The notes under the pieces are model-generated. The model did not search any database and had not been told where the DNA came from. It was given only the letters and a program-made list of their open reading frames with translations. The translations under genes and the position numbers were made by a program. Below are positions 35,501 through 63,400 of a stretch of 63,762 bases of DNA, one piece after another. Where the stretch lies: positions 20,336,001-20,399,762 of the forward strand of contig OZ286476.1 of the NCBI GenBank assembly GCA_965644265.1. Direction: 5' to 3'. Within the stretch, counting starts at the first letter, position 1; the number at the start of each line of letters is the position of its first letter. Source of the stretch: Glycera tridactyla. Taxonomy: Eukaryota.

Positions 35501-38500
35501 CAGTCATCCATGAAGACATTCCAGTGAATTGGAGGTTTTTTATGGTACAGTGAAACCTGCAATGAGAGCCGCCCTGATGCAAGACCACCTCCAACAGGAG
35601 ACTGCTTCTGCAGGGCAGCTTTGATATTTACGTAATCAAATATACCTACAACCAAAGACCTGAAGAAATTCATCAGGCCAGTGGATTCTATAAAGCTGCA
35701 AAAAGTTCTCATAAAATGGCCAAAAATGTCACTTACTATGTTGACAGTGTTGATGATTGTCTGCCATCTTATTCATGACTGACATTTTTGATCATGTTAC
35801 AAGAACTCTTGGCATCTTTATAGAAAGACACCACTCTTTGCTGACATTCAGGGCAGTCTTTTGTCGCAGGTTTCACTCTACAAAATGAAAAAAATGCAGC
35901 TGCTGTTGAGTTGTCATTTCAGGTAAATGCACGCTTGCGCACAGTTAACTAACACAACCATGCAGTCCCTGTTTGTGTTTCTTTACCAGACCTGCCAGGT
36001 CCTCCCGAGGCACCTGCAATCACCGAGATCTTCAAAGAGACCTGCGTGGTCACTTGGCAACCACCGACGGAAGATGGTGGAACCCCGATCCTTGGATACC
36101 ACGTTGAACGTCGCTTGACCTCGTCATCTCGTTGGGTGAAGGTCACAAAGGACCTCATCACTGAGCTGACCTTGAAGGTCACCGATTTGATTGAGGACAA
36201 TGAGTACGAATTCCGTATCTTCGCTGTCAACAAAGTTGGAGATGGTCCCCCAAGTGCTCCATCACCACCATTTGTTGCTAAAGATCCATGGAGTAAGTAT
36301 AATTTTTGTGTTTCTCCCTGCCTGTAATCATTATTCTATATCCATAACTTTTTTGCACTTCAAATTGGATGAATCATTTCAGTAAAATGTTTCATATTAT
36401 AATATATTAAGATAAACTTCACTCATTCCACTTTGACAAATTTCATGGCATTTTTGGTGTGCCTTGAATTTACTGACCCATGGGTATGTTGGAAACCAAT
36501 CAGAACAAATTTTGTAGGATTCATTTTCACCCCTTTACAACATTAGTAAAATTGTCAAATTCTCCACTATTTTTTGTGATTGTTCATGGACAGTTCCAGG
36601 AATACCACTTATTCTTTCATTCTTGCCTTATTCTAGTGCTTTTAATAAAGGTATTTGTGTAGAACTGAGACTATAACCGTATCACTCTCTTGTGGAGGAG
36701 GTATCTGATCAACTATATCCAAAGGCACATCTGTGATGCCACTCCATGGTTTCCTTAAAAAGTCTCTGAACTGCATTGAGGGATATGATCTATGATCCTC
36801 GAAACTGTCGAAATGGCCATGTGTGAAGGCCAATGAAGACCGGAAAACTGTAATATGATCGCCCAATTTATTGATTTTTTTCTTGAATATTTGCACTCTT
36901 CATTATTGAATGATGAAAGATATTCACATCAAATTGAGAGAATTGAGACTAGATGTTGAAGAGCACATCAAGGCAAAGCAAAAGAGCACATGATTATTCA
37001 GGATGTAGTTTTTCAAGGTCATGATCTTGGGAATCTCCTGCATACCCACCAGATGGCCTACCATTCCCAGGGAAACCTTGAATGTGTGCATTATGCTTTC
37101 CCCAGCTTGCAGCCTGTAAGGTGCTGCCACCTGGCATCATGAGCAACAAACTAGTTCTTACTTTACTTACTCATTATAAACANNNNNNNNNNNNNNNNNN
37201 NNNNNNNNNNNNNNNNNNNNNNNNNNNNNNNNNNNNNNNNNNNNNNNNNNNNNNNNNNNNNNNNNNNNNNNNNNNNNNNNNNNNNNNNNNNNNNNNNNNN
37301 NNNNNNNNNNNNNNNNNNNNNNNNNNNNNNNNNNNNNNNNNNNNNNNNNNNNNNNNNTGCCCGGAAAATCAAAATCTGACCAATGAAAGAGTTTATATTT
37401 CATCATACTTCATTCATGCTTATGTGTCTTCAAGTGCATATGTCATCATCTTCTTCTCCACAGACAAACCCGGTAAACCAGATCCACCAGCAATTGCCAA
37501 GACCACCAACGGAACAATCACAATCAAATACAAGCCACCAGAGGATGATGGTGGTTCAGAGATCTTCAACTACGTCATCGAGTACCGTGCAGAGGGTGCA
37601 TTCAAGTGGATTCAAGCTAACAAGGAGAACGTCGCAGACTTGACCTTCACAACAAAGGGTCTGAGTCCCGATACGCTGTATGAGTTCCGTATTGCGGCTG
37701 AGAACAGGGCCGGAGTCGGTCCACCCTCGGATCCATCCAAACCAATCCCTGCAAAGGAAATTATCGGTAAGTGAACAATTTTTTTTGCAATTCTAGGGTC
37801 TCAGACTTCTGGTTGTCTAGTTACTAATACAGTCGAATCTGCATATGAAACCATCTCTGTATGAAGGCTGCCTGCCCACAAAAACCACCCAAAGAGAAGA
37901 CTGCATTAGTATCATTTCTATACAGTGGTCTCTTGGCTACCCTGAGCAGTGCCCATGATACTATTTTCTACAGTTGAAGGGTGTGTTTGTGAGCAGGTTT
38001 TACTCTATATAGTGAGATCACCTGTCTATGTCTGCCTTATTGTGCTATGATGGATGGTATTGGTAGACAGGTTTCACTTTATAGATCATGCTGTTGAATT
38101 TGTCAGATGCATAGTTTCGTCTCCCAGTAATAGTGGTGTACATTTTGTCAGAATTGCGAATTTTCAGTCGCACATTCAGTTCCAGAAGGAACTAGTCGAC
38201 ATTCCCCTCTCCTTTTGCTCTCAACTTGACCTCTACAGACTATGAGTGAAGCTCTCTGGTTCTCCACCATCTTCTGGGTTGATATAAGTCATTACAATTC
38301 CAGGGTATGAGCTCAGCCCTTGACTCTTTTGTACTGTATATGCTAGCCACAGAAAAAATCAAAATCAAATTTTGGTCAGGAAGAAAAAAAGAGAATTTCA
38401 CTTCCAGAATCCTGCACTTACAGAATGCAGCTTGTCTAGGGAAAGGTCATGTTTGAATGCCATCTTTCACGATGTATGACTCTTGGTGATCTTCACATAA

Positions 38501-41500
38501 GAAGTTGACCCAGCCCTAACTGAAATAGAACCATCTGGTGGAGCCATCTAGTGGTGTGAAGATACACTAATCTCTAATTCAAGTCATGATGCGCTCACCC
38601 AGCTATTGGCGCCATCTATCTGCTGGAGTTCCTGCATAAAACTTCAAGGGCTGACTTCTTCAGAAACTCTAAATATAGTTGAACCTGCTATAATGGGCAC
38701 CTGTATTAAGCAACCACCTGCCTTAAGCAACCACTTTTGAAAATCCCTCCGAGTATTTCTCACTATAATTAACCTGTATTAGACTGTTTGACTGTACACA
38801 AATTGATTGGCCTTTGATGGCCGCTATTCATGAATCTCCTAATTTCATGGAAGGCATTTATTATGCATCTGTGTGTATCATTTATTTCCACTGAAGAGTA
38901 TTTGTAATGTGTTCATCTCCACGAAAAAATGCAGGCTTTTGTAAAATCCTGATCAAATTCAAGACCCTAAACACAAACAATGTGTGATAGGAATTTGACA
39001 AAGGTCAATTTATTGTGGGATGAATGCATTTCTTGTTTTGTTTTGTGTATTACCAATGGTGGAACATCTCTGTTTCCAGATGGCAGTCCACCCAAGGTCA
39101 CAGAGAACCTGCAGGATGTCCTGACGGTTGCCCCCGCCAACACGAAACTCGAATGTGAGATTGACGGTGGCAAGCCATTGGCCAGTTTGACATGGTACCG
39201 TGACGGACGTGAGGTCCATGCGGGCGATCGCTTTGAGATGTCCTACACGGAGGATTCAGCTGAACTCACCATCAAGGGCACCGTGCCAACGGATGCTGGT
39301 GTCTACAAGTGTGAGGCTGTCAACAAACTTGGACGTTGTGATACCACTTGTAATCTCACCGTGCACAGTNNNNNNNNNNNNNNNNNNNNNNNNNNNNNNN
39401 NNNNNNNNNNNNNNNNNNNNNNNNNNNNNNNNNNNNNNNNNNNNNNNNNNNNNNNNNNNNNNNNNNNNNNNNNNNNNNNNNNNNNNNNNNNNNNNNNNNN
39501 NNNNNNNNNNNNNNNNNNNNNNNNNNNNNNNNNNNNNNNNNNNNNNNNNNNNNNNNNNNNNNNNNNNNAAGGAACCCAAAAATTGGGCATAGGCATTTGA
39601 CACATTTTATGGACCTTTTGCTAATGATTCATGTCACTGACATGAAAGTAATCTTAATAGTGAGCATCATTATGTGTATTTGTGTTTGAGAGGTCTGCAC
39701 ATGGTTGAGATGATGAACATCATATTGGTATCACAATTACAATATAAGAACCGCCTATCCTCTGCAATGTATGAAAGTGTCTCCATCACACACCAGGGGA
39801 ATCACTGATTTAGGAAAGGGTTGGTTGAAATCATTCACATCTGGTAGATTATCTCAAGCCGACATTTAATGAGAGCCTATCATGTTTATATTGTGGATAT
39901 TTTGGAAATGGTCGTAGAGTCCTAGTTCCATGATGAAGTATGAGTAGACATTCACTTTTGATAGCTGAAATAAGTACACTTCAGGTGAAAATGATAGAGA
40001 TACTATAGTAAGACGACATTGGTGTGTGAGATCCGCTTGTTATTCCCAACTCGGTTGTGTCCGCGGCTGGAGGCACACTCGGCCAGCATGTGAGAATACT
40101 CAGTAAACCAGTATGTCCACTTCTCAAATCAGAATACACCAAATACAGTTGTCACATTGTGAATTTATTGGTGGACAGTTGTCTGGATAGCTTAGAGCAT
40201 GTGACTGTTCATTCCAACACAGACACATGAGTTTGGTGCAATACTGAAGATTGAAGATCCAGGTTGAAATCCACAAAAATGAATTGAATGATGATTCCTG
40301 ATGGTGTCATTTGGACATTACGAGTGTGTACAGTGAAACCTGTGACAAGAGACCCCCTAATGAGAGACCATTTTCTACAGGTTTTTTCAGGGCAGCTTTT
40401 CTATAAGACATAGTCAAATATACCTCCTACCTCTTTTGGGAGACCACTTTTTGCCCACATTTAGTGTGGTCTCTCGACACAGGTTTCAATGTATTGTGAA
40501 ATAGGGTTTCATTCAAGACCAATTGTCTTTTTTTTCAGGCAAACCAGTCATCACATACGATGATGCTCTGAAGGAAGGCATCTCCCTAAAGGCTGGCGCC
40601 TCCCTGCTCATCATGGTGAATGTCACCGGCGAGCCAACACCCCGCATCACCTGGTACCATGGTGAGGAACAGATCTATGATGGAGCTGAGGGCACAACCA
40701 TTGAAACTGGTGCTGACTTCTCACGATTGACCATCAAACCCGCCCGTGGTCAACACACTGGTGTTTACAAGGTCGTGGCTGAGAACAAACACGGCAGCGA
40801 TGAGGCAATCTTCAATGCTACAGTCATTGGTAAGTATTATATTTATGTCATTCATAAACCAAAGGCAGCAATGGCTGCTGAAACAGTAAGAGATTCATGC
40901 TCTACCTACTTTTCAGCTTCATTTAGAATATTTTACCTGAGGCTGCAAATGGGACCTCATGATCCATGGTATACTCTTGGGCCTGGATTCAGAATTCTCC
41001 CTGCCTGAGGTTTGATGATATGTAAAAATGCCTCCCACATCATGAAACTCCCTTATTTTGCCATCTTTCATATGTTAACAATAGTACATGTCTACTTTTT
41101 TTATCAAAAAGTGATGACTTTGGGGTGGAAAGATTCGGACATTTTTTTATGAATACATAATTGGCTGATGCTTTCACAATGCATTGCAGGATCAACAGAT
41201 AGTTGACAATTTTGAGGCAGCTGAATTTAGCACAGATGCGCCCTATATGTGCTTAGTGATGTAGTGGGGTAGGTTACAAACCAACCAAAAACAGATTGAT
41301 TCTGAGCATGTAGTGTGATACTTAAGTGGGCGATCATTGAGAATAGTTTAGATATATAATCGTATTCAATCAATTTGTTTCCAGACCGCCCGTCCCCGCC
41401 TCTGAATCCACACCATACCGAGGTCTACAAGGATTACATCACCATTGCCTGGGAGACGCCCAAGTCTGATGGTGGCTCACCAATCACCGGATACATCGTG

Positions 41501-44500
41501 GAACGACGTGACGTCAAGAAATCATCCTGGGTCAACGCAGGAACCACTGATGCTTCAACGCTGACCCTGAAATGTACTCGCCTTGTTGAGGGCAATGAGT
41601 ATCTATTCCGAGTTTACGCTGAGAATGCTATCGGACAGAGTGATCCTGCCGAGACTACAGAACCAGTCAAAGCACGTCTCCCATTCGGTGAGTATCTTAT
41701 GCATTCACCATACAACTGGAAAGTATGATTTTGAAGTATTGTATGGAATGAGTGCATCAATTTGAAGGACAGCTTCGATGTATGTTTACTGCTTCACCTC
41801 AGTTGGTTGAAAATATAGTGAGGCTACTTGAAATTACTCATTTCTCTGAAACCACGGTCTTTAAGCTGATTGCCTCCCACAGAAATTCATGCATTTTGCT
41901 TCTGAGTTTGGTTCAGTGCTTCCTAAAACAAATAAATTCCTGATGTGAATGATGTTATCCTCGAAATACTTCAACCAAAGTAAAGGTAGTTGTGCCGATG
42001 CCCTTTTTAGAATTGACCAGTATGCATGTGGAATTGGTTCACTCTATGGTTCGATGTGGTATAATATGTCTCATTGTATGGCATTCAGATTTATATCAGT
42101 GAATTGGTACTAATTGTCCAACATTATAGTGATTGACCATGCTATTGAACTTTTGAATTGTGGTTATGATGTGATTAATATTATTATTGTGATTATCTAT
42201 TCCCTTGTCATTTGAGATCCAAATCTCAATATTGCTGAATAGTTCTCTGTTGCCATGTCTATATGAGATTGTTTCTGTATGTTTTAGATCCACCAAATCC
42301 ACCTAGGAATGTCCAGGTGAAAGACATCACAAAGACGTCTTGCAAGCTGACTTGGGAAGTTCCTGACTTTGATGGTGGCTCTCCAATCACTGGCTACTAT
42401 GTGGAGAAGTTCTCTGGAACCCGCTGGTCAAAGGTCAACAAGAAGTCTATCAAGAACCTTTACATGGAATTCGATGACCTCATTGAGTTGTCTGAATATG
42501 AGTTCCGTGTAATTGCTGAGAATGATGCTGGTCAGAGCAAGCCATCAGACACCTGCGGCCAGTTCAAGGCTAAAGATCCATTTGATCCACCAGGTCGCCC
42601 AGATGCCCCAGAACCCGAGATGGCCAAGGACAGTGCTAAGGTGACATGGAAGCCACCAGAGAGCGATGGTGGGGCACCCATCACAAACTACATCCTAGAA
42701 ATGCGCCGTGTTGGTGATGTCAAGTGGGTTGTATGCAATAAGAAGGAGACAGTGACCGACTTGGAATTCACAGTCACTGGAATCACAGAAGAGACTGATT
42801 ATGAGTTCAGAGTCACAGCTGAGAACAAGGCTGGACCAGGTCAACCATCACCTCCATCCAAACCAGCCAGATACAGTAAGTCAATACCCATACAGATGTC
42901 CTTTTGGAAAAACTATCAGACTTCACCGTTTGAGAATACTGAGAAGCAAGACATTCAGTTCTTTGAATAAAATCTCAATCTCAATCAACCAACCAGCCAT
43001 ATGAAGGTCCATTTGCAGGGCATTTTGCGGTCATTAGCTTTCTTCAAGATAAGATCAATCGACTGATCTGAGGTCAATTCAGAAAAGGATGACCTAATTT
43101 GATATTCAAACTCATGATCCATTTTTTAACAAAATTTATGTTCTATTTCTTAACCAATATAGCTATATTGAGGAGATTCTCAAAATCTTCTGAATAAAAT
43201 GCAGCAAAAATGGTCTCCTAGATAGCAGGACTGATTTATAGCCAGTACCAAAAGTATCTGTTGATTTCCCAAATTCCTTGAAGAAATATTGCTGTATATC
43301 CTTCTAAGAATGATATTTATCTCCTCTAATAGGTGAGAAGATCACATTCATCCGTGAACTTGAGGACACTATCATAAAGGAAGCCAATAAGACAGTCACA
43401 CTGGAATGTGAGATTTCTAAGGAGAATCTCACTGTTGACTGGTATAAGGGCGACCGCAAAATCCGCCGTGATGAGAAGTTCGACATCAAGATGGAGGGCA
43501 AGGTTCACAAGCTCATCATTGAGAAATGTGACGTGGATGACATTGCCTCCTATAGTGCAACTTACAAGAATCTGAAGACTTCATGCAAGTTGGATCTTGC
43601 TATTGCACCCAAGTTTGAGGCAACTGAGGAGACACGCTACATGAAGGTGAGTCTGAATATACCCCATTATCCTGTTTAGCTACCAGGGTGTCTCAATATT
43701 GTCATCAATCTGCTGATTCTATACATACGTTATGGAGCTACCTGGCAAAAGTTGTTGATAAGTAATCAATTGAAATTGCTATTGGAATGATATCCTGAGG
43801 TGAACACAAGCTCTGATGGTTGGCCACAGATTATGACATCCTCTCTACAAGTTATTGAGCTGAACATCTCTTACCATAAGAGATAATTTGTTAGGGATAT
43901 GACAAACATTCTCTCTGTTTGCCAAATTAACCTACCTGCAGATGGTTGCCAGATCCCAGTCAGATGAAGGTACAGTGAAACCTGTCTTGGGAGACCCCTC
44001 TTTTGGGAGACCACCCTCTAATGGGAGACCGCTCTTTATCGGCTCCTCTCTATTTGACATCGCAAAATATACCTCCAATGAGAGACCACCTGCCTTGAGA
44101 GACCACTTTTTGTTGACGTTTGGGGCGGTCTCCCAAGACAGGTTTTACTGTACTAAATAGAAATGATATGTCATCTAGAAACTTTGAATGTTAGTGAACA
44201 TCAACTATTGCACATCACAGGTACATAAGTTTATATGATTGCTTTGTGCAGAGAAAATGGGCCATGAGTAGGTCCTCAGTTGTCATTGATTTCTCATCAG
44301 TGTTGATGTTGTTTTGCTTTATGTTATTCTCACCTGATTCCAGTTTCGAATGTGGACAATTAGACCTCCTCCTGCAAGCTTATCTGTTTGGCTAACTGAG
44401 AAAACTTTAGCGGAATCCCCTGCCGATGATCTTTATCTTAAGTGTGACACAACAGAATGGGGACCTGTTTCCCTGTACAAGATGTTGCAACTGAACAGCC

Positions 44501-47500
44501 TGATGTATATGCACCATTTTTATCATTCCAGGTTGGCTCTCATGACAAGATTGAGCTGATATTTGCTGCAAACCCAATGCCTGAGGTGGAGTGGAAGTTC
44601 AACAATGGCAAGCTGCCTGATGCTCGCCGCTTCAAGACTGACATCATCCGTGGCATGACCTCCATGACTATGACCAAGCTCCAGCGTCCTGACAAGGGCA
44701 ACTATGTTGTTACCCTGAAGAACGAGCATGGACAGTCATCACTCACTGTCAAACTCATTGTGCAAGGTGAGTAGAATCTCTCCTAATGCTGAACATCTTA
44801 CCATACTATAAATGCACTTATGAATGTGATTATGGCTTTTGTTCAGAGGTAGTGGGTGACTAATTGAGACAAAATCATGAAGGTCGTTTGTATATCATCT
44901 TCTCGTGATAAAGTGATATGAAATGCCTTAAGAGAGCTAATCTAATGATGTACTGCAAAGGTGAGAAGCTTTCAGATTTCCCATGAGGAATCTTCATCAG
45001 CTCATGGCTACTGTGTCACTGCAGTATGAAAAACATATTCATGATGTTTCTAAAGAAATCTCCTTCTTTGAGCATTCAAAGTAACCATTATTCCAAGGAT
45101 GTTCTGAGTGAATCACTAGCATGTTCAATCTTCCTTTGGATAAAGGTTTATGTAAGATTAACTTTTAAAAATGAAATTCGTTCCCTTTTCACAGATGTTC
45201 CAAGTGCACCAGATCGCTTCCGTCCTACAAAGGTTACAGAGAACACAGTGTCCTTGGTATGGGAGGAGCCAGTTGATGATGGTGGCAGCGCGATCACTGG
45301 ATACAAACTGGAGAGACGTGAGGCCAGCAAGCGTAACTGGATTTCCGTTGGTAACTTCACTGAGATGGAGACCACAGTCACTGGATTAACGGAGAAAGTC
45401 CCATACCTCTTCCGTGTTGCCGCTGAGAATGAGATCGGCATGGGACCATTTGTAGAGCTCTCAGAACCCGTCACACCGAAGAGCCAGCATAGTAAGTGGA
45501 CCTGAATCATTTACCAGCAATTCAACAGTCGTTGCATCCGGAACATGAACTGTATACCCTTAGAGATACTATGAGAATGTTGCCAGCAGTATGCTTCTTT
45601 CAGCATAGAAAACATTCATTAAATTTCTACTAGTACTCCTGTTATGTAAGTCAAAAATGTTTCCAGGAATTACATCTATGTCACGAAATATTTGCAATCA
45701 TCAAGAGATCTAGCTACATGTAGTATCTTTGCTCTTGAACAAAAACTGGTAGATTTTTACAGTGATTCAGCTTAGCTCACAAAAGCTAATGTTGTTTGCC
45801 AATTTTGTAACTTAGGTGAAGCTTCTTCAACAAAACATCAACCACAACCATAATGGCAAACCATTACTTCTATTAGCAGCATATATCTTGTAAAGGTAAC
45901 CACTGCCATCTGGTGGTACATTAATCCACTGACAATGTAAATTGGTGTTGATTGATATGGAGCAATTGAATATAGATAATACCATCAGCGAGTACTCTGC
46001 TAACATTGAAATCATTTGAGGAATGGTTTCGAGATATTGTGAATTGAGTGCAAAAATCTGCTCAAAGTCAAAAGGCAATCATCAGTGGTACTTTTATTTG
46101 GATTAATTTTTTTGGCAATTTTGAAGGAGCCATTGGAGAATTGCTATGTGAAGCACCTTCGATACTACATCATGGCATGTATGGAGTGTTGAAAGAATGC
46201 AACCATTGATCTGTGTACAACTGTTATTTGATTGACTGATTCTTTTCTGTAACAGACCCACCAGGTGCTCCCGAAGAACCAACTGTCTCTGATGGGATGA
46301 AATCAAGCTGCGTTCTGACATGGAAACCACCAACAGATGATGGTGGCACCCCAGTCACCGGCTATTTCATCGAGCGACGATTGACCTCATCCACTCGCTG
46401 GGTCAAGGTCAACAAGGATGCGGTCACAGAATTGACTCTGAAGGTCAAAGAACTGATTGAGGACAATGAATATGAGTTCCGTATCTATGCTGTTAACAAG
46501 ATTGGTGAAGGTCCACCTAGCTCACCAACAGCGCCATTCAAGGCTAGAGACCCATGGGGTAAGTTATCATGTGTTGAATGACCGTCATTGTTAGGTATTA
46601 ATTTTGGTGAAATCCTCAAGGGCTTTCGCTGTTGCATGATTGCTCAAATTTGAAGCAAATTTGAGCTCATTGCTGGACATTTACTTGGCAGTTATAGTCA
46701 TTATTGGTTGTCTACTTTTGTGAAGGGAAGAAGTAGCCCCTCCATCTCATCTGAAAATGTAGTGTAATGATTAAGAGCCATCTCCTGAAAAGAGAAGGAT
46801 GCGAATGAAAATTTGTCAACCCATATTTGTGTACATATTATGCCAGAAACCATTACCTAGGTGAAAGTAGTAATGCTGCCTAAGTAACATTGTTGCTAAA
46901 ATTCCGTGCCATAGTACATCAAACACTTCGAGAATATTGAAGCATTCTGATTCCAGCACTAGGTCCACCATCAGGCAAATTGGAATAAAGAGTTCAATCC
47001 TATATTTTTCCGGCCTGTCATGGTGGCTCAGTGGTAGCATGCTGGGCTGGCGTGCAACGGGTCTGGGTTCAATCCCCGGCCCTACCATGCAGGAATGTTT
47101 CACCCGTCATCTTTGCTCCTCCTTGGCAGGTGGTTTGATTTAGCCTACTCAAGTGCAGAAAGTGGACCTAAAACCTTAACATTTCATTTATTTTTCTATG
47201 TTTTTCCACAGATAAACCTGGTAAGCCTGATCCACCAGTGATTGCCAAGACAACCAATGGTACAATCACCCTCAAGTACAAGCCACCAGAGGATGATGGC
47301 GGTGCTGAGATCTTCAACTACGTCATCGAGTACCTTGCAGAAGGTGCATTCAAGTGGGTCCAAGCAAACCGGGAGAATGTTGCGGACCTGACCTATACCA
47401 TCCGTAATCTTGACCAAGACACAATGTATGAGTTCCGTATTGCTGCTGAGAACAAGGCTGGTGTTGGACCACCATCTGACAAATCCAAAGCAGTTCCTGC

Positions 47501-53500: not shown

Positions 53501-56500
53501 TAGAGGTTTATGGAAGATTAACTGTTAAAAATGAGATTTGTTCCCTTTTCACAGATGTTCCAAGTGCACCAGATCGTTTCCGTCCTACCAAGGTTACAGA
53601 GAACACAGTGTCTTTGGTATGGGAGGAGCCAGTTGATGATGGTGGCAGCGTGATCACTGGATACAAAATGGAGAGACGTGAGGCCAGCAAGCGTAACTGG
53701 ATTTCTGTTGGTAACTTCACCGAGATGGAGACCACAGTCACTGGATTAACGGAGAACCTTCCATACCTATTCCGTGTTGCTGCTGAGAATGAGATCGGCA
53801 TGGGACCATTTGTAGAGCTCTCAGAACCCGTCACACCAAAGAGCCAGCACAGTAAGTGAACCTGATTGAGTATTGTTTAATGTCCTATCATTTACCACCA
53901 GTCCAAAAGCAGATGCATGTGGACCATGAAGTGATTGGTAAAATTGTACAGTGAGTTCAGCTCAGCTCACAAAAGCTAATGTTCACCAAGTTGTCTGCCA
54001 GTTTTGTAACTTAGTTGAAGCAACCTCAACAAAACATCAACCACAAGCATCATGGCAAACCATAAATTCTGTTAGCAGCACATGTCTTGTGAAGGTAACC
54101 ACTGCCATCTGATGGCATATGAATTCATTGATGATGTAAATTGATATTGGTGAGACTGAGCAATTGAATATGAATAACGCATGCTTCAGCTTCCTATCCG
54201 CAAGGACTCTGCTAACATTGAAACCATTTGAGAAATGGTTTTGAGAGAGGGGCATTATGTTTTTGAATCGACCCTGGTGTGGGTGGGTGGGTGTGTGGGT
54301 GGCTGGGTGGGTGAATAATGGTTTCCGACCGATAACTCAAAAAGTTTCAGGGCTGATCTTTTCAAACTTGGGATACAGACTCCCTGGGGAATGGCAAGAC
54401 ACCTATTGATTTCGGGGCGGTCATCTTGAATTTCAAAGTCACTGAGTGCAAAAAGGTCAAAACCATTTCCGACCAATAACTTTAAAAGTTTCAGGGCTAG
54501 CTTTCTCAAACTTAGTGAACAGAATTCCCTGGGGTCTGGTAAGACACCTATCGATTTGGGGGTGGCCATCTTGAATTTCAAGGTCACTAAGTGCAAAAAG
54601 GTCAAAATGGTTTCTGACCAATGACTTGAAGAGTTTCAGGGTGAACCTTCTCAAATTTCATGAACAGACTCCCCTAGGGTCTATCAAAACAGCTATCGAT
54701 TTTTGAGTGGCCATCTTGAATTTCAAGGTCACTGAGTGCAAAAAGGTCAAAACCATTTCTGACCAATAACTTGAAAAGTTTCAGAGCTAGCTTTCCCAAA
54801 TTTGGTGTGCAGACTCCCCCAGGTTCTGGTAAGAATCCCATCGATTTTGAGGCGGCCATCTTTAATTTCAAGGTCACTAAGTGCAAAAAGGTCAAAATGG
54901 TTTCGAACCTATAAATCAAAAAGTTTCAGGGCTAATCTTTTCAAACTTGGTATACAGTCTCTCCTGGGGTATGGCAAGAAATCTATATATTTTGGGGCAG
55001 CCATCTTGAATTTCAAGGTCACTGAGTGTGGAAAAGGTATTAGTTTTGTTCTATTTCACTTCTTTCGTTCCACCTTCCTGAGACAAGCATGCACTCAGCG
55101 GGGCATTCACACTTACTGAGTGCATCTATTTTTTGGGGGAAATTTTGAATGAGCTATCAGAAAATTGCTATATGAAGCACCTTCGATACTATATCATGGC
55201 ATGTATGACTGTTGAAAGAATGTGACCATTGGTCTGTGTACAACTGTTATTTCAATGACCGATTGTTTTCTGTAACAGACCCACCAGGTGCTCCTGAAGA
55301 ACCAACTGTCTCTGATGGGATGAAATCAAGCTGCGTTCTAACATGGAAACCACCAACAGATGATGGTGGCACCCCAGTCACCGGCTACTTCATTGAGCGT
55401 CGGTTGACCTCATCTTCCCGCTGGGTCAAGGTGAACAAGGATGCGGTCACAGAATTGACTCTGAAGGTCAAAGACCTGATTGAGGACAATGAATACGAAT
55501 TCCGTATCTATGCTGTCAACAAGATTGGTGAAGGTCCACCTAGCTCACCAACAGCACCATTCAAGGCTAGAGACCCATGGGGTGAGTCATCATCTGTTGA
55601 ATGACTGTATAGCATTGTTTGGTATAAGTTTTGGTGAACTCCTCTAGGGTTTTTCATGTTGCCTAATTGTTCATTCTGAGATGAAGCAGACTTGAGCCTA
55701 TTGCTCAACATTCGCATGGCGGCTACGTTCATTATTGATTGACTACTTCAATGGTTTAGAGAAGTAGCCCTGCCATCTCATCTGAAAATGTAGTGTAATA
55801 ATTGCAGCCATTTCATGAAAAGAGAAGGATGCAAGTGAAAATTTGTCATCCCATATCTATGTACATATAATCACCAGAAACCATTACCTATTTGAAGGTA
55901 GTAATGCTAGTTGAGTCACATAGCTACATGTATTCTATCAAACCTTTAAAAGATATTAAAGCATTCTGAACAGTAAATTCTGAATTAAGAGAATTCAATC
56001 TTATGTTCTTTTACACAGACAAACCTGGTAAGCCAGATCCACCAGTGATTGCCAAGACAACCAATGGTACAATCACCCTCAAGTACAAGCCACCAGAGGA
56101 TGATGGCGGTGCTGAGATCTTCAACTACGTCATCGAGTACCTTGCAGAAGGTGCATTCAAGTGGATTCAAGCTAACAGGGAGAACGTCGCTGACTTGACC
56201 TATACCATCCGTAATCTTGATCAAGACACAATGTATGAGTTCCGTATTGCTGCTGAGAACAAGGCTGGTGTTGGACCACCATCCGACAAATCGAAAGCAG
56301 TTCCTGCTCGAGAAATAATTGGTGAGCATGTTGTAAACAAATGCTATGAATATTGCAACATTTGCGTCATAACATGATTTTTATTTCTGTATTATCCATG
56401 GCTTGCCACAACAAACTAGTCAAAGTCTGGCTCATTGCCAGATTGGTTATTTCAAAGAAACATATAAAGAATTCCGAGAAGATCAGTGAATCACTCGGAC

Positions 56501-57414
56501 AATTGACTAACATGATCATCATAGAGAAAGTTCCATTGATAGCTTGGGCATGTTTGGCTCAATTTCAGCATGGAATGTTTGGCATAAATTTTGATAATAG
56601 GGTTGGTTCAAATTGTGGGAATACTTTCAATCCCATGATGTATGACACATTTTTTATTCATTACCCAGAAGTAATATTTGAGAAAGTCCATGAAACTGAC
56701 ACGATATAATGACTTCAGGTCTATGATGGATATCTAATTTTGTTATTCAGATGGCAGTCCACCCAAGGTGATTGAAGACCTGCAGGATGTCCTGACACTT
56801 GCCCCTGCCAATACAAAGCTGGAGTGTGAGATCGATGGTGGCAAGCCATTGGCCAGTGTGAGTTGGTACCGTGATGGACGTGAGGTCTATGCTGGTGATC
56901 GCTACACCACATCTTACTCTGATGATTCTGCTGTCCTCACCATCAAGGAGACAGTACTGACTGATGCTGGTGTCTACAAGTGTGAGGCCGTCAACAAACT
57001 TGGACGTTGTGACACTACTTGCCACCTCACCGTACAAAGTGAGTAATGAATCAATTAGAATATTTTGTCAACAAAGAGATGTAAGCTGTGTTCATCATAC
57101 ACTATTATACTCCATGATAAGAAGTTTTGATAGTGCATAATCAGGGTGCAGAGATCATATGTATAAAATTGGCATCATTAACTTTGTCTATTTGTCTGCA
57201 CTGCTCTATATCTCCCCCTCTTTCCCTTTGTATATTAGTACAGTATTATCTTTCAGTCCAGAATGATCATTTGATGGCAAGAAAATGTTGAATTACACTC
57301 AATCGATCAATCTACCAATCAATCAATCAATCAATATCTTTATTTTTGTCCGGCTGTCAGTCTCTCTCTCTCACACTAACACACCCACACACAATGCATG
57401 CATGCGAGCACACA

Positions 57415-57476
<62 letters not shown>

Positions 57477-60400
57477 TCTCCATGAAGACAAATAACTATA
57501 TATGACTTTTGGCTTGAATTTTTCAGGTAAACCAGTCATCACATATGATGCTGCCCTCAAGGAAGGTGTCTCACTGAAGGCAGGTGCCTCTCTCATTCTG
57601 ATGGTGAACATCAGTGGCGAGCCACAGCCTCGTGCCTCCTGGTTCCTTGGTGATGAACAGCTATATGATGGATCAGAGGGAGTCACCATCGAATCTGGTG
57701 CTGACTTCTCACGTCTGACCATCAAACCGGTACGAGGGCAACACAGCGGAGTGTTCAAGGTTGTTGCTGAGAACAAACATGGCAGTGATGAGGCCACATT
57801 CAATGCCACAATCATTGGTGAGTCTTCCAATTAATCTCTGTCCCAGATCTACATTTTGTAACACCAATATGTATTTCAGTGATTTGTGTTATTAGGATGC
57901 AAATTTTTCCATGCGCAGAAGCTGAAGTAATTTGCCCTCACAGTCAGTTGCGATGAATAGAAGCTAGGTAACATTGCATGTGGGGTTGTGCTCAAACCAT
58001 TTCCAATGTGCTAATGTGAAACGTATGACATTGATTTCCCATTATCATGAATATATAGCAGGAAATGGAGGACCCAGTTACAGCATGATAGTAAAAAATA
58101 TGCACATTCACCCACATGGCCAATTGATCAAATGGTCCAAAATTTCTTTAACATACATTGGCAACAACATTCTGTTATGTTTCAATTGTCCATGAATTGT
58201 AAAAATGTTTATTCATTTTCCCATCAGATGCATCAGAGGAAATTGTGATTCCTCCTGTCGATTCCCTGGTTATAACTACTGAGCTTATTTGGTAATCAAG
58301 CCTAAGTGTCCGAATAGATGTCAATCTAAGATATGGATGTATGGTGTATAATGTATGCTATCATTGATTTTTTCAGACCGCCCATCCGTGCCTCTGAATC
58401 CACACCATACCGAGGTCTACAAGGATTACATCACCATCGCCTGGGAGACACCCAAGTCTGATGGTGGCTCACCAATTACCGGTTACATTGTTGAGAAGCG
58501 TGACATCAAGAAATCATCCTGGGTGAACGCAGGAAATGTTGATGCCTCAACGCTGACCCTGAAGTGTACTCGTCTTGTTGAAGGCAATGAGTATCTGTTC
58601 CGAGTTTATGCTGAAAATAAAATTGGACAGAGTGATCCTGCCGAGACTACAGAACCAGTCAAGGCACGCCTTCCATTTGGTAAGTGGAATTGCTTTTCTG
58701 ATGATTGGTAATTGAGTTGTTTCCTGAGTTACAGTTCACTACTTCAAGATTGGTGGCAATTTTTTTTATCTCACTCATGTGCCATGGAAACATTAGAGTA
58801 CTCTCCCCGGAGACAGTTTCATCCCTCATATACCACTCGTCAGCCAAATGTGTTGATTTAAGATTGTTGACAACTTGTCAGTCAAAATAGTGGACCCCTT
58901 GCCAACACAAGAATGTGAAAGTAAAACTCTGAGGCTCATTTGTGGATTATTGACAATTTGTATGGTCTCCATTGCTGAGTTGTGGACCTTCTATGATGAC
59001 TTTCATATCATTCAAGATAGTGGATTGACCATATTCATTTCAGTTGATTACAATCTCAAATGCAGTACATTCATATTATCCACCACATAAGGTCCTGAAA
59101 CCACTAAACTTGTAATGTATTGCCATCTTTGTGGAGCGATTACAAAGCACTTATTCCTAATCACCCCAGTTAAATACTTCTTTTATATTTGCAGACCCAC
59201 CAAATCCACCCAGGAATGTCCGTGTGAAGGATGTAACAAAGACATCATGCACTCTGACTTGGGAAGTTCCCGACTTTGATGGTGGCTCTCCAATCACTGG
59301 CTATTATGTGGAGAAGTTCTCTGGAACCCGCTGGATCAAGGTCAACAAGAAGCCAATGAAGAAACTCATCATGGAATTCGATGACCTCATTGAGTTGTCT
59401 GAATATGAGTTCCGTGTAATTGCTGAGAATGATGCTGGTCAGAGCAAGCCGTCAGATGGCTGCGGCCAGTTCAAGGCTAAAGATCCATTTGATCCACCAG
59501 GTCGCCCAGATGCCCCAGAACCCGAGATGGCCAAGGACAGTGCTAAGGTGACATGGAAGCCACCACAGAGCGATGGTGGAGCACCCATCACAAACTACAT
59601 TGTAGAGATGCGCCGCACCGGTGATGTGAAGTGGGTTGTATGTAACAAGAAGGAGAAGGTGACTGACTTGGAATTCACAGTAACTGGATTGGTTGAGGAG
59701 ACTGAATATGAGTTCAGGATCACAGCTGAGAACAAAGCTGGACCAGGTCAACCATCACCTCCATCCAAACCATCCAAATATGGTAAGCTCCAGGTTTCAA
59801 ATTTTAAGAAATATTAGCACAGAAGCAAGAAAGGATACAAAAACAAAATAGTCAGCATTCCTCACTCTGGTACATATGGAAAAATTGTTTCGGTTCTGTC
59901 TGCCCTACTTCTGTTTGGAATCAGGATTTTGTGTTTTGGTGATCTAAGATCATAGCATAGAATACATATTGACCACCCACATTTCAGGCCCCACCAGCAG
60001 GAAGTTCTTCCCAGCAAACACATAAGATGTGCCAAACTTACTATCAAGTATTCTCTATTTTGAAGCTGTCAAAATGGCTGTGAATCTCTTTCCATCACCG
60101 AAACTTACCCACGCATACACAAATAATTGCTGCAATTTGACACCCTGCAGTCATCAGTTCTCATGATATGCAGGAATTGTCAGATGATACTTGTTCAACT
60201 GTGACCAAAAGCTGCTTATCATCTTTATCTTTATCTGCCTCAATTTTTCAGTGGAGAAAATTACATTCATCCGTGAACTTGAGGAAATCACCATCAAGGA
60301 AGTCTGCAAGACAGTCACATTGGAATGTGAGATTTCCAAGGAAAATCTCACTGTTGACTGGTACAAGGGTGAACGTAAGCTGCGCCGTGACGAGAAGTTT

Positions 60401-63400
60401 GACATCAAGATTGAGGGCAAGGTTCACAAGCTGATTATCGAGAAATGTGATGTAGATGACTGTGCAACTTACAGTGCTACCTACAAGAAGCTCACTACAT
60501 CAGGAAAACTGAACCTAGCAATTGCTCCCAAGTTTGAAGCCACCCAGGAGACACGTTACATGAAGGTAAGTTACTCAACCACATTGAAACATGTCAACAC
60601 GGACCATTCTGAATGTTACCAAAGTGTATTTCTTTCGAAAGTGGTAGTATTATATCAGAGGTATATCTTTGACCATATCAAATAGGAAAGCGGTTCGGAG
60701 ATCTCTCATTGTGGGTAGTCTCATCTAGGTCTCTCATGCCAGTATTGGACCATCAACTTTCACTATGCAACAACAGGTAATCTATATGTTAGATCAAAGT
60801 TGAAGCCTGAATATAGTATTTGGAAGACCCAGTTATGTGTTAATTTCTTGTCTTGTATTTTATGTTTTGGAAATGACTAGGATTGTCCACTCCTATTATG
60901 ATATTGGAGAATGGTCTTTTGTTAGTTGAACTGGGCTCTCTGCTGATAATCAGATGGGAGAACAACTCAGTGTATGATGATTTTTGCAGTTGCATGCAGA
61001 ATGATCGTTATTGGCTGGCTACACTATCTACGAATTTGTGTGATGTTCCTTGATTGCAGGTTGGCTCCCATGACAAGATTGAGCTACTCTTCGCTGCAGC
61101 TCCAATGCCTGAGGTTGAGTGGAAGTACAACAATGGCAAGCTGCCTGATGCTCGCCGCTTCCAGACAGACATCATCCTTGGCATGACCTCCATGACCATG
61201 ACCAAACTGAAGCGTTCAGACAAGGGCGACTACGTAGTTACCCTGAAGAACGAACATGGACAGGCATCACTCACTGTCAAACTCATCGTGCAAGGTGAAT
61301 ATGAGAAATTTATTTCAAGCTATTGAGTTCACTTTCCAGCAAATGATGGACAAAATTCACGGAAAGAAATAAGTGGATGACCTGAGTCATATCAGCCATT
61401 ACAATTGCTCAAAGCAAAACAAGGCTGTCTTAGACTTGGTTCATGAGTTACTCTGCATGGCTTTTTGTTCAGCCATCAGTGTTGTTGGAACAATGAAGAG
61501 TCATTTTTGGTTCAGACATATGATGAAAGGCTCTGTTCAGCTCTAGTGAGATTCATCATCTGAGGCTTTTCCTTCCGATATTCCAGTTGACCTTGTTAAG
61601 ACATATGCTCAATTAGTTTTTCCAGAGGAATAGATTTTCCACATGATTGTAAGATTATGGTTGTGATGAAAATCAAAAGCAATGTAGCCCAAACCAATGA
61701 TTGAGGATAATTACCTGTTGTCTTTCAATTTATTATTAGATAAACATGAAGTTGTATTTGTGTGTAGCTATTTTGACTTATAATGCCTTCTGTTTCACAG
61801 ATGTTCCAAGTGAACCAGATCGCTTCCGTGCTACCAAGGTTACAGAGAACACAGTGTCCTTGGTATGGGAGGAGCCAGTTGACGATGGTGGCAGTGCGAT
61901 CACCGGATACAAGATGGAGAGACGTGAGGCCAGCAAGCGTAACTGGATCTCCGTTGGCAGCTTTACCGACATGGAGACCACAGTCACTGGACTCATCGAG
62001 AATACTCCATACCAATTCCGCATTGCTGCTGAGAATGAGATCGGCATGGGACCATTTGCTGAACTTGCTGAACCTGTCACTCCAAAGAGCCAGCATAGTA
62101 AGTGGACCTATATCATCCATCACCACTTCTTCAGTAGCTGCATTTGAACCTTAAACTGTTTGTTCTAAGAGATACTTCTTCATTGTTCTAGATATTTCAA
62201 CATTTATATCAAGGTGAAAATACCACTCCTGAGCCTGCAGGCTGTTCAGTTTGACTAACAGAGAGAATGTTAGCAAAGTCTTCTACCAAATATTGTTCAT
62301 CTGAGGTTCGACACAATGTATGGGGACGTGATTTCTGTTACAAAATGTTAGTGACCATTAGTTGCTAGTCAACAGCCTGCTGGAGTCAAGATTTTAAAAC
62401 ATTTTGTTTGATGTGAAAATAGCCACATTTGTTGAGTCCATAACTTGCTTATGTACCACCTTTTAAAAATTTCAAAATTCGAGACTGAATTAACATTCAA
62501 GATTCATTCATAAGTATGTTTCGATAAATGGTGATATGCAGATGTATAATACTCCATCTTTTCCATCTGACCAATACAGTTTTGGAACCTAATGGAGTTG
62601 TAATGTGCTTTTTGTTCAGATCCACCAGGACCACCTTCGGCACCAGAAGTGTCTGAGGCTCGCAAGGATGGTTGCGTGTTGACATGGAAAGCACCAGAAG
62701 ACGATGGTGGCACTCCAGTTACTGGGTACATCATTGAACGTGGAACTCCAGGCAGTGCCCGCTGGTTGCGCCTCAACAAAAAGACAGTTGATGAGCTCAC
62801 CTACAAGGTGACTGAGCTGATTGAAGACAACGAGTATATCTTCCGCATCACAGCTGTCAACAAGATTGGTGAGGGACCACCAGGACCAGAGTCTGAACCT
62901 ATGAAGGCTAAGGATCCATGGGGTGAGTTGGATTTCTCTTGCATTTTTCGATGCCAAGTTCAGGTACTTCAGAATTGTCCACTATCTCTCAGTCCTACAC
63001 ATATATCAAAGATGCACCAACTAATTTGAAATTGTTGATGTTTGATCATTCACAATGGACAATCATTCATTTAATGTGGTTTTTCCACAGATTGTTGATA
63101 ATCTGTCCACTAAGTCATGAACTGTGACAAGCCAAATTACCCAACAGATGAATTCAAAGATACCTAATTGCCAGTCATTGTGATTTTGCAATCAGGATTG
63201 CCATTATCATCCTTGCATGATGATATATGCAGGGACAGGAACTGCACAGTGGTAGCAGTAATCGCAACACCCACAGAAGCAGCAGCAGGAGCGACTAGTA
63301 TTCATGTGACCCAAATCCTCACTCACCCAATCGCTGTATGATGTATCTGCTTTTTACCAGGAAGAGAATTTTAGAAATACAGTCCTAATCTATAAACTCT

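What the first reader, a model, noticed from the sequence alone, without database searches (positions are those of the whole stretch)
35990..62922. Older nested duplication with its breakpoint in FN3 exon D explains the 9-exon triplication
Seen: the similar block runs from D1 to C4; domains outside it (A1, B1, C1, J0, D4, E4) are much more divergent. D2/D3 resemble D4 at the N-terminus ([17 protein letters not shown]) and D1 further on ([32 protein letters not shown]). Introns of the older pair do not align by eye. Inference: a first unequal crossover in D gave two units and a second in H gave three. This order predicts the observed pairings E2=E3 vs E1, F2=F3 vs F1, G2=G3 vs G1, IJ1=IJ2 vs IJ3 and ABC2=ABC3 vs ABC4. 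It would be a readable record of a giant protein lengthening by exact super-repeat steps via recombination in FN3 exons.
Basis: inference. Interest (0 to 1): 0.7.

Follow-up and report, generated by a model that had tools for sequence, protein, structure and literature searches.

The report
Titin-like super-repeat duplicated twice
A titin-like muscle gene carries three tandem copies of a nine-exon, ten-domain block that relatives carry once or twice; the two-step duplication history holds, but placing the older breakpoint inside FN3 exon D is not supported by the tests.

Summary
The + strand encodes a titin-family Ig/FN3 protein with a 10-domain super-repeat in nine exons per unit. All splice sites are canonical, and both N gaps lie in introns.

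**Confirmed**
- The similar block runs from D1 to C4; the flanking domains are only 36-66% identical to it.
- All predicted pairings hold: E/F/G 2=3 versus 1, and IJ/ABC 1=2 versus 3.
- The younger junction lies in exon H. The introns either side of H2 switch parent.
- Introns of the older pair no longer align.

**New here**
- Two unnamed relatives carry exactly one unit between D1-type and D4-type exons.
- A third relative carries two units, and those two are each other's closest kin.
- So this spot was amplified repeatedly, or it evolves in concert.

**Not supported**
- A single crossover in exon D. The maximum chi-square test gives p = 0.04-0.14, where a clean hybrid would reach p < 0.05 in 93% of simulations.
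- The site-likelihood test with outgroups gives p = 0.29.
- The D4-like signal is confined to codons 20-38. Several residues "shared with D4" are ancestral. D1-type markers (E6, P24, T26) sit inside the supposed D4 part.
- Exon-restricted gene conversion is demonstrable and blurs the record.

The older junction is bracketed to about 0.8 kb. This is a known kind of event (human TTN triplication, nebulin). The scan had already noted this stretch.

The parts
2018..25708 (+). Flanking exons A1 (2018-2290), B1 (24248-24526) and C1 (25415-25708) of the preceding super-repeat. They lie outside the duplicated block.
   Evidence: Canonical splice sites. They are 36-55% identical to A/B/C 2-4. A1/B1-type orthologues precede the D1-type exon in all three relatives.
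35990..41687 (+). First half of the a-type unit: exons D1 (35990-36292), E1, F1, G1 and H1 (41385-41687).
   Evidence: Exon table. They are 70-83% nt identical to the D2/3..G2/3 exons, and only the exons align.
37183..37357 (.). Assembly gap inside the D1>E1 intron.
   Evidence: The E1 acceptor lies 108 nt downstream of the gap, so no frame is involved.
39370..39568 (.). Assembly gap at the start of the F1>G1 intron. It begins right after the GT donor.
   Evidence: The last coding base of F1 is 39367 and the GT is at 39368-39369.
41688..45491 (+). Second half of the a-type unit, copy 1: H1>IJ1 intron, then IJ1, A2, B2, C2.
   Evidence: Exons and introns align with 49887-53851 at 78-94%. Exon dS is 0.06-0.16.
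45581..46377 (+). Bracket for the older junction, in copy-D2 coordinates. It runs from about 90 nt into the C2>D2 intron to codon 40 of exon D2. The same bracket exists upstream of and in D3.
   Evidence: C2/C3 and C4 share about 90 nt of intron; C1 does not. D1-D2 similarity reaches the older-pair level only from codon 41. The intron flanks of D carry no signal.
46256..46558 (+). Exon D2, the internal FN3. It is D1-type from codon 41. Codons 20-38 (46315-46371) form a D4-like patch. Codons 1-19 match neither parent.
45492..49744 (+). First half of the b-type unit, copy 1: C2>D2 intron, D2, E2, F2, G2 and the 5' part of H2.
   Evidence: Aligns, introns included, with 53852-58530 at 78-87%.
49597..49744 (+). 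Junction zone of the younger duplication inside exon H2 (exon nt 11-158).
   Evidence: Informative sites are H3-like at nt 6, 10 and 11, mixed up to nt 147, and H1-like from nt 158. Maximum chi-square gives p = 0.019. The flanking introns switch parent.
49745..53851 (+). Second half of the a-type unit, copy 2: 3' part of H2, then IJ2, A3, B3, C3.
53852..58679 (+). First half of the b-type unit, copy 2: C3>D3 intron, D3 (55279-55581), E3, F3, G3 and H3.
58680..62097 (+). Second half of the b-type unit: IJ3, A4, B4, C4.
   Evidence: 82-90% nt identical to IJ1/2 and ABC2/3, in exons only. IJ1 and IJ3 share a 106-nt perfect run, p = 0.001.
62620..62922 (+). Exon D4, the first domain beyond the block. 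It is a D4-type FN3 conserved across relatives.
   Evidence: 68% identical to the syntenic D4-type exons of L002 and L004, against 53-54% for D1-D3. It falls in a separate clade.

Best explanation
The window holds part of a titin-family gene whose protein is built from a 10-domain super-repeat (Ig-Ig-Fn3-Fn3-Fn3, twice). One super-repeat length of it, nine exons and about 8-10 kb, running from within or just before exon D to exon C, stands three times head to tail.

**Inferred history**
1. The ancestral state had one unit between a D1-type and a D4-type exon, as two relatives still show.
2. An older tandem duplication made an a unit and a b unit.
3. Much later, an unequal homologous crossover between H of the b unit and H of the a unit added the third unit.

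All 27 duplicated exons remain open, keep canonical splice sites and are under purifying selection. The protein has therefore most likely been lengthened by 20 domains.

**The older junction.** It cannot be read to the base. It lies somewhere in about 0.8 kb, between 90 nt into the C>D intron and codon 40 of D. An intronic or extreme-5' junction by illegitimate recombination is at least as likely as a crossover in the exon.

**The mosaic look of D2/D3.** The pattern is D1-type markers at codons 6, 24 and 26, a D4-like patch at codons 20-38, and D1-type sequence from codon 41. I attribute it to three things: derived changes in D1 itself, fast change in the first 19 codons, and possibly a short gene-conversion tract. 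Exon-restricted conversion is demonstrably active in this array.

**What is shown and what is inferred.** Shown: the copy structure, the pairings, the junction in H, the one-unit and two-unit relatives, and the conversion tracts. Inferred: the mechanism and place of the older junction, the independence of the relative's duplication, and expression.
For: - **Exon structure:** phase and splice sites; Ig I-set and fn3 domains; best solved relatives are titin A-band chains.
- **Copy structure and pairings:**
- **Younger junction in H:**
- **Purifying selection:** dN/dS 0.02-0.25 in all pairs.
- **One unit in relatives:** in L002 and L004 exactly one unit lies between D1-type and D4-type exons, preceded by A1/B1-type exons.
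- **Two units in a third relative:**
- **Per-exon trees:** our three copies are monophyletic in 8 of 8 exon families (support 0.93-1.0). The relative's two units are sister to each other in 7 of 8 (0.84-0.99).
- **D tests:** maximum chi-square p = 0.04-0.14. Site-likelihood difference is -4.4 for codons 1-40 and +19.4 for codons 41-100, permutation p = 0.29. Profile log-odds show a mosaic. Segment counts and the 93% power estimate are.
- **Ancestral residues:** seen in the syntenic orthologues.
- **Gene conversion:** a 106-nt and an 81-nt perfect run in IJ (p = 0.001 and 0.006). Older-pair exon dS ranges from 0.28 to 1.6. Younger-pair exon dS of 0.06-0.08 sits below intron divergence.
Against: - The 5'/3' contrast in D is real in size. 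A fixed split at nt 117 gives Fisher p = 0.017 before correcting for the choice of breakpoint.
- With only the syntenic orthologues as reference, codons 1-40 of D2 score like D4's own. A crossover in D with later changes therefore cannot be excluded.
- D1-D2 identity falls to background in codons 1-40, although orthologous comparisons show equal rates in both parts. An intronic junction alone does not predict this.
- No reads could be laid, so the three-unit assembly and the use of the exons in mRNA are untested.
- The organisms of the relatives are unknown.
Confidence: 0.6

Rival explanations
1. The older event was one homologous unequal crossover inside FN3 exon D, near codons 38-41. D2/D3 would then descend from D4* on the 5' side and from D1* on the 3' side.
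For: - Codons 1-40: D2-D4 70% against D2-D1 55%. Codons 41-100: D2-D1 77% against D2-D4 63%.
- In nt 58-117, D2-D4 is 78-80%, which is the level of older-pair exons.
- The amino-acid maximum chi-square for D3 gives p = 0.039 with the break at codons 38-41.
- The block boundaries on both sides fall at D.
- All exons are phase 1, and the younger event did use an exon.
Against: - Other versions of the test give p = 0.08-0.14, and third codon positions carry no signal.
- With outgroups, p = 0.29.
- A clean hybrid would be detected in 93% of simulations. Too few D4-like sites are seen in the 5' part, p = 0.04.
- In nt 1-57, D2-D4 is only 56-58%, below the D1-D4 background of 60%.
- E6 and T26 of D2/D3 equal D1, whereas the 17 D4-type domains examined all have S6 and E26. 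This requires 3 plus 2 base changes converging on the D1 state.
- L20, V33 and T34 are ancestral.
- About 60% identity between the parental exons is a poor substrate for homologous exchange.
Confidence: 0.2
2. The older duplication is far older than it looks and is shared with the two-unit relative. Copies within each genome have since been kept alike by gene conversion (concerted evolution). The a/b exon divergences then date the last conversions and not the duplication, and the D mosaic is a product of those conversions.
For: - Copies cluster by species in the per-exon trees.
- Conversion tracts exist and exon dS is heterogeneous.
- a/b introns are unalignable even where exon dS is only 0.3.
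- In both genomes the junction lies at D, give or take one intron.
- The exon from a closer relative (P0001) sits at dS of about 1.0 from IJ1, IJ2 and IJ3 alike.
Against: - The relative's two units are only 55-79% identical, so little homogenisation has happened there. Yet they are still closer to each other than to our a or b units. Concerted evolution would therefore be needed in both lineages and in nearly every exon.
- The internal D of the relative is D4-type throughout, whereas ours is D1-type from codon 41.
- Our a/b exons A, E, F and G have dS 0.7-1.2 and no long identical tracts.
Confidence: 0.15
3. Assembly artefact: the three units are haplotypes or mis-joined reads of fewer real copies.
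For: The window contains assembly gaps.
Against: - The copies differ by 2-6% in exons and 6-22% in aligned intron stretches.
- They differ by many indels, a private tandem array and different intron lengths. This is far beyond allelic divergence.
- Both gaps lie in the first unit, away from both junctions.
Confidence: 0.03

Closest known systems
Triplicated region of human TTN (exons 173-199, three blocks of nine exons; 'two additional 10xIg super-repeats' absent from teleosts)
   Same: A giant sarcomeric Ig/FN3 gene is lengthened by tandem copies of a nine-exon block, giving three units in place of one (PMC11514934; PMC12198301).
   Different: The human block lies in the elastic I-band/PEVK part, and mapping reads to single exons within it is reported as difficult (PMC11514934). 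Here the block is a mixed Ig/Fn3 super-repeat of A-band type. The copies are old (exon dS 0.06-1.6), two ages can be told apart, and one junction is mapped inside an exon.
Nebulin super-repeat number variation and the NEB triplicate region
   Same: The number of whole super-repeats differs between species through segmental duplication in a filament-ruler type protein (PMC7754682).
   Different: It is a different protein fold (nebulin repeats) and belongs to the thin filament. No relation to filament length or body size is known here.
Titin A-band super-repeats (7-domain and 11-domain)
   Same: The building blocks are I-set Ig and fn3 domains. The best solved matches are human titin C-zone chains 8g4l and 8q6t, at about 45% identity per domain pair. 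There is position-specific conservation of domains across species (PMC10665226).
   Different: The pattern here is 10 domains, Ig-Ig-Fn3-Fn3-Fn3 twice, with Ig pairs that titin's A-band lacks. No phrase for such a pattern was found in the paper library apart from myomesin's N-terminal layout. The best full-length relatives are 'titin-like' predictions at 50% identity or less.
Concerted evolution of tandem exon arrays by interlocus gene conversion
   Same: Perfect-identity tracts are confined to exons. Exon dS is below intron divergence. Paralogues cluster by species.
   Different: Homogenisation is partial and differs from exon to exon. Exons A, E, F and G keep dS 0.7-1.2.

Membership tests
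Titin/connectin family of sarcomeric Ig-Fn3 giants | Chains of I-set Ig and fibronectin type III domains | tested here: met
   Pfam I-set and fn3 are above their cut-offs for every exon of a unit.
Titin/connectin family of sarcomeric Ig-Fn3 giants | Closest solved relatives are titin A-band domains | tested here: met
   Exon IJ hits 8g4l and 8q6t titin chains best, at about 45% identity. MyBP-C and myomesin score lower.
Titin/connectin family of sarcomeric Ig-Fn3 giants | A-band super-repeat of 7 (Ig-Fn-Fn-Ig-Fn-Fn-Fn) or 11 domains | tested here: not met
   The order here is Ig-Ig-Fn3-Fn3-Fn3-Ig-Ig-Fn3-Fn3-Fn3. The same order is found in three relatives. This is therefore a titin-like protein, not an orthologue of vertebrate titin.
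Titin/connectin family of sarcomeric Ig-Fn3 giants | C-terminal kinase domain; expression in muscle | not testable with these tools
Tandem segmental duplication by unequal crossing-over | Head-to-tail copies in one orientation with collinear exons and preserved phase | tested here: met
Tandem segmental duplication by unequal crossing-over | A hybrid element at the junction whose two flanks descend from different parents | tested here: met
   This holds for the younger event. The upstream intron of H2 is of the H3 kind and the downstream intron of the H1 kind, and the sites switch within nt 11-158.
Tandem segmental duplication by unequal crossing-over | The same, for the older event in exon D | tested here: inconclusive
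   p = 0.04-0.14 and p = 0.29 with outgroups. The pattern is a mosaic. The intron flanks are uninformative.
Tandem segmental duplication by unequal crossing-over | The unduplicated state is present in relatives | tested here: met
   L002 and L004 carry one unit. The contig covered by L003, L009 and L001 carries two.
Concerted evolution by gene conversion | Identity tracts longer than chance between copies whose surroundings have diverged | tested here: met
   IJ1-IJ3 share 106 nt (p = 0.001), IJ2-IJ3 81 nt (p = 0.006) and H2-H3 56 nt (p = 0.019). There are none in D1-D2, A, F or G.

The most novel reading that the evidence does not exclude
The same super-repeat-length unit of a titin-like protein with an undescribed 10-domain repeat has been amplified independently in at least two lineages, giving one, two and three copies in four genomes. 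Each junction lies at or next to exon D or exon H. The locus would then be a recurrent 'length dial' of a thick-filament-type ruler protein, adding exactly 10 domains per step. It would offer a natural series for testing whether protein length sets filament length.
Probability: 0.45. Interest if true: 0.55.

Novelty: new member of a known kind. Interest (0 to 1): 0.35.

Why it matters
Giant sarcomeric proteins are thought to act as rulers, and how their length changes in evolution is known mostly from titin's I-band triplication and from nebulin. Here an A-band-type super-repeat unit varies from one to three copies among related genomes. All copies are under purifying selection, and one junction is mapped inside an exon. 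This gives a usable comparative series: copy number could be compared with thick-filament length. It also serves as a caution. Exon-restricted gene conversion makes exon divergence a poor clock and can imitate a recombinant exon, so 'readable' duplication histories in such arrays need outgroups before they are believed.

Tried and rejected
- **Intron homology around D** (upstream of D2/D3 against D1 or D4, and downstream likewise). Local alignment with shuffles and MAFFT gave nothing above the negative controls. Positive controls among older-pair introns also fail, so this test has no power. One control pair scored z = 6.5, probably through shared repeats.\n- **First constrained-tree test.** It was uninformative because both constraints allowed the same tree. 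It was redone with stricter constraints.\n- **Search for close relatives.** The word search with exon IJ found one exon at 89-91% identity on a 1-kb metagenome contig. It sits at dS of about 1.0 from all three IJ copies, so it does not date the events. The search with the D alignment found nothing above 72%.\n- **Whole-library phmmer search.** It returned only 'titin-like' giants at 50% identity or less.\n- **E4 as a marker of orthology** for the domain after D4. The result was ambiguous. Every search was made exon by exon by reference.\n- **Gaps.** The N gaps were not filled.\n- **Assembly artefact.** Rejected on divergence between the copies.


Full report
**What is there.** The + strand of the window carries 32 exons of a gene made only of I-set Ig and fn3 domains. 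The order is A(Ig) B(Ig) C D E(Fn3) F G(Ig) H I J(Fn3), with I and J in one exon, so each 10-domain super-repeat has nine exons. All exons have AG/GT borders. They are phase 1, except for the phase-0 intron that splits Ig B in units 2-4. The best solved relatives of exon IJ are human titin C-zone chains (8g4l, 8q6t) at about 45% identity. The Ig-Ig pairs do not fit titin's 7- or 11-domain repeats, so I call the protein titin-like and not titin.

**Gaps first.** The gap at 37183-37357 lies inside the D1>E1 intron, 108 nt before the E1 acceptor. The gap at 39370-39568 begins right after the GT that follows the last coding base of F1. No reading frame crosses a gap, and the exon order D1-E1-F1-G1 is complete. 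The true lengths of those two introns are unknown. Nothing was filled in.

**The observation.** Self-comparison and per-exon statistics confirm the block and every predicted pairing.

| Exon family | Closer pair (nt identity) | Against the third copy |
|---|---|---|
| E | E2=E3 95% | 79-81% |
| F | F2=F3 94% | 82% |
| G | G2=G3 98% | 77-79% |
| IJ | IJ1=IJ2 98% | 90% |
| A | A2=A3 98% | 82% |
| B | B2=B3 98% | 89% |
| C | C2=C3 95% | 88% |

- Flanking domains are far more distant: A1 36-38%, B1 about 55%, C1 51-54%, D4 57-66%, E4 59-64%, J0 60-63%.
- For the younger pair, introns align at 78-94%.
- For the older pair, only exons align, plus about 90 nt of intron after exon C that C2, C3 and C4 share and C1 does not.
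- dN/dS is 0.02-0.25 in all pairs, so all copies look like working coding exons.

**The younger event.** The intron upstream of H2 aligns with the one upstream of H3. The intron downstream of H2 aligns with the one after H1. Within exon H the informative sites are H3-like at nt 6-11, mixed up to nt 147, and H1-like from nt 158 (maximum chi-square p = 0.019). The junction in exon H is therefore solid. The event is not very young: aligned intron stretches differ by 6-22%.

| Codons | D2-D4 | D2-D1 | D1-D4 |
|---|---|---|---|
| 1-40 | 70% | 55% | 55% |
| 41-100 | 63% | 77% | 58% |

The pattern does not hold up under test.

- Maximum chi-square with permutation gives p = 0.14 and 0.08 (nucleotides, D2 and D3) and p = 0.13 and 0.04 (amino acids). 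Third codon positions carry no signal.
- Simulation shows that a clean hybrid, as parent-like as the 3' part is, would reach p < 0.05 in 93% of cases. The 5' part has too few D4-like sites for that model (p = 0.04) and too few D1-like sites for a pure D1 origin (p = 0.0009, chosen after the fact).
- By segment, D1-like: D4-like sites run 11:8 (nt 1-57), 5:12 (58-117), 31:8 (118-240) and 10:9 (241-300). This is a mosaic.
- The first 57 nt match neither parent above the D1-D4 background.

**Outgroups.** A search with the D1-D4 alignment found about 100 D-position exons from unnamed metagenome-assembly contigs. They split into a D1-type clade and a D4-type clade. I fetched four loci and could place syntenic orthologues.

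- The D1-position exons of three relatives also carry L20 and V/I33-T/I34. Much of the motif that D2/D3 share with D4 is therefore ancestral and was lost by D1 alone.
- D2/D3 have E6, P24 and T26 like D1 and the D1-type exons. The 17 D4-type exons examined all have S6 and E26. A D4 origin of that part needs 3 plus 2 base changes converging on the D1 state.
- Profile log-odds put codons 1-19 with D1-type when the wider D1-type and D4-type clades serve as reference; with only the syntenic orthologues they score slightly D4-like (-4.4, against -4.7 for D4 itself). They put codons 20-38 with D4-type and codons 41-59 and 88-94 strongly with D1-type.
- Site likelihoods for 'sister of D1' against 'sister of D4' give -4.4 for codons 1-40 and +19.4 for codons 41-100. 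Permutation p is 0.29 for such a prefix.
- The intron flanks of D carry no usable signal.

I conclude that D2/D3 is D1-derived from codon 41 on. It carries a short D4-like patch. A single crossover at codons 38-41 is neither demonstrated nor excluded. The older junction is bracketed to about 0.8 kb (45581-46377 in the D2 copy). Because D1* and D4* were already ancient paralogues of about 60% identity, an illegitimate junction in the C>D intron is at least as plausible as homologous exchange in the exon.

**Gene conversion blurs the record.**

- Older-pair exon dS is 0.28-0.45 for H, IJ, B and C, but 0.7-1.2 for A, E, F and G, and 1.3-1.6 for D. All the introns between these exons are unalignable.
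- IJ1 and IJ3 share a perfect 106-nt run (p = 0.001), and IJ2 and IJ3 share one of 81 nt (p = 0.006).
- In the younger pair, exons A, B, G and IJ have dS 0.06-0.08, below the divergence of their introns.

Exon divergence is therefore not a clock here. A patch such as codons 20-38 of D2/D3 could be a conversion tract.

- In L002 (ERZ26222911) and L004 (ERZ25767047) the order is A1-type, B1-type, C, D1-type, E, F, G, H+IJ, A, B, C, D4-type, E and onward. That is exactly one unit.
- A third assembly (ERZ26052378, covered by L008, L003, L009 and L001) reads as follows. An A1-type exon (65% identical) is followed by a 20-kb intron, then B1-type, C, a 6-kb intron and a D1-type exon (72%). Then come E-F-G-H-IJ-A-B-C, a second D, again E-F-G-H-IJ-A-B-C, a third D, and E-F-G. 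That makes two units.
- Per-exon trees make our three copies monophyletic in all eight families (support 0.93-1.0). They make that relative's two units sister to each other in seven of eight (0.84-0.99). The single unit of L002/L004 falls outside.
- The relative's internal D is D4-type over its whole length, unlike ours.

The simplest reading is that the same unit was duplicated independently in two lineages. A shared old duplication followed by concerted evolution in both lineages is the rival reading. The organisms are not named in the sources.

**Limits.**

- The large phmmer search gave only titin-like giants at 50% identity or less, from amphioxus and Saccoglossus.
- One closer exon (P0001, 89-91% identical) sits at dS of about 1.0 from all three IJ copies and does not date the events.

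**Known parallels.** Human TTN holds a triplicated nine-exon block, exons 173-199 (PMC11514934). It is described as two extra 10xIg super-repeats that teleosts lack (PMC12198301). Nebulin super-repeat numbers vary across vertebrates (PMC7754682). Lengthening of a giant muscle protein by whole repeat blocks is thus a known kind of event. This case adds an A-band-type unit, two distinguishable ages, one exon-mapped junction and a 1-2-3 series among relatives.

**Verdict.** The two-step order is supported. The breakpoint in exon D is not established, and I give it about 0.2. The earlier notes of this scan on the same stretch agree with what I tested: the young duplication in H, the exon-restricted homogenisation, the discordant A/B intron, and the 10-domain super-repeat.

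Noticed in passing
window 43646-44532, 51761-52282, 60565-61060; compare 2290-24248: In units 2-4 the intron between Ig A and Ig B is missing. A phase-0 intron sits about 41 nt inside Ig B instead. A1/B1 keep the domain-boundary intron. The same split-type B exons (76-78 aa matches) follow the A2-type exon in all three relatives, so the discordance is old.
   Followed up: partly
window 2291-24247 and 25709-35991; L008/L003 of the relative: The A1>B1 intron is 22 kb and the C1>D1 intron 10 kb, against about 0.5 kb elsewhere in the array. The two-unit relative has about 20 kb and 6.4 kb at the same two places. The one-unit relatives have short introns there.
   Followed up: no
L002:9923-10807, L004:12553-13437: In the two one-unit relatives, H, I and J lie in one open exon of about 885 nt. 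Here and in the two-unit relative an intron separates H from IJ. An intron has been gained or lost at the exon that hosts the younger junction.
   Followed up: no
window 54317-55038: There is a tandem array with a period of about 144 nt inside the C3>D3 intron. It is absent from the C2>D2 intron and accounts for much of the length difference between the two copies.
   Followed up: no
window 63423-63617; L001:17291-17461 and 18136-18270: Exon E4 is cut by an intron after codon 65 (donor GTAGGT). The E exon after the third D of the two-unit relative is also split, but 8 codons earlier. The one-unit relatives have an unsplit E there.
   Followed up: partly
L009:14200-20588 and L001:1-2139: A long satellite-like tandem array fills most of the roughly 19-kb intron between B and C of the first unit in the two-unit relative.
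   Followed up: no
window 45491-45580, 53851-53980, 62097-62185: About 90 nt of intron directly after exon C stay about 70% alike between a-type and b-type units, although all other older-pair intron sequence is unalignable. This may be a conversion tract running over the exon edge, or a conserved splicing element.
   Followed up: partly
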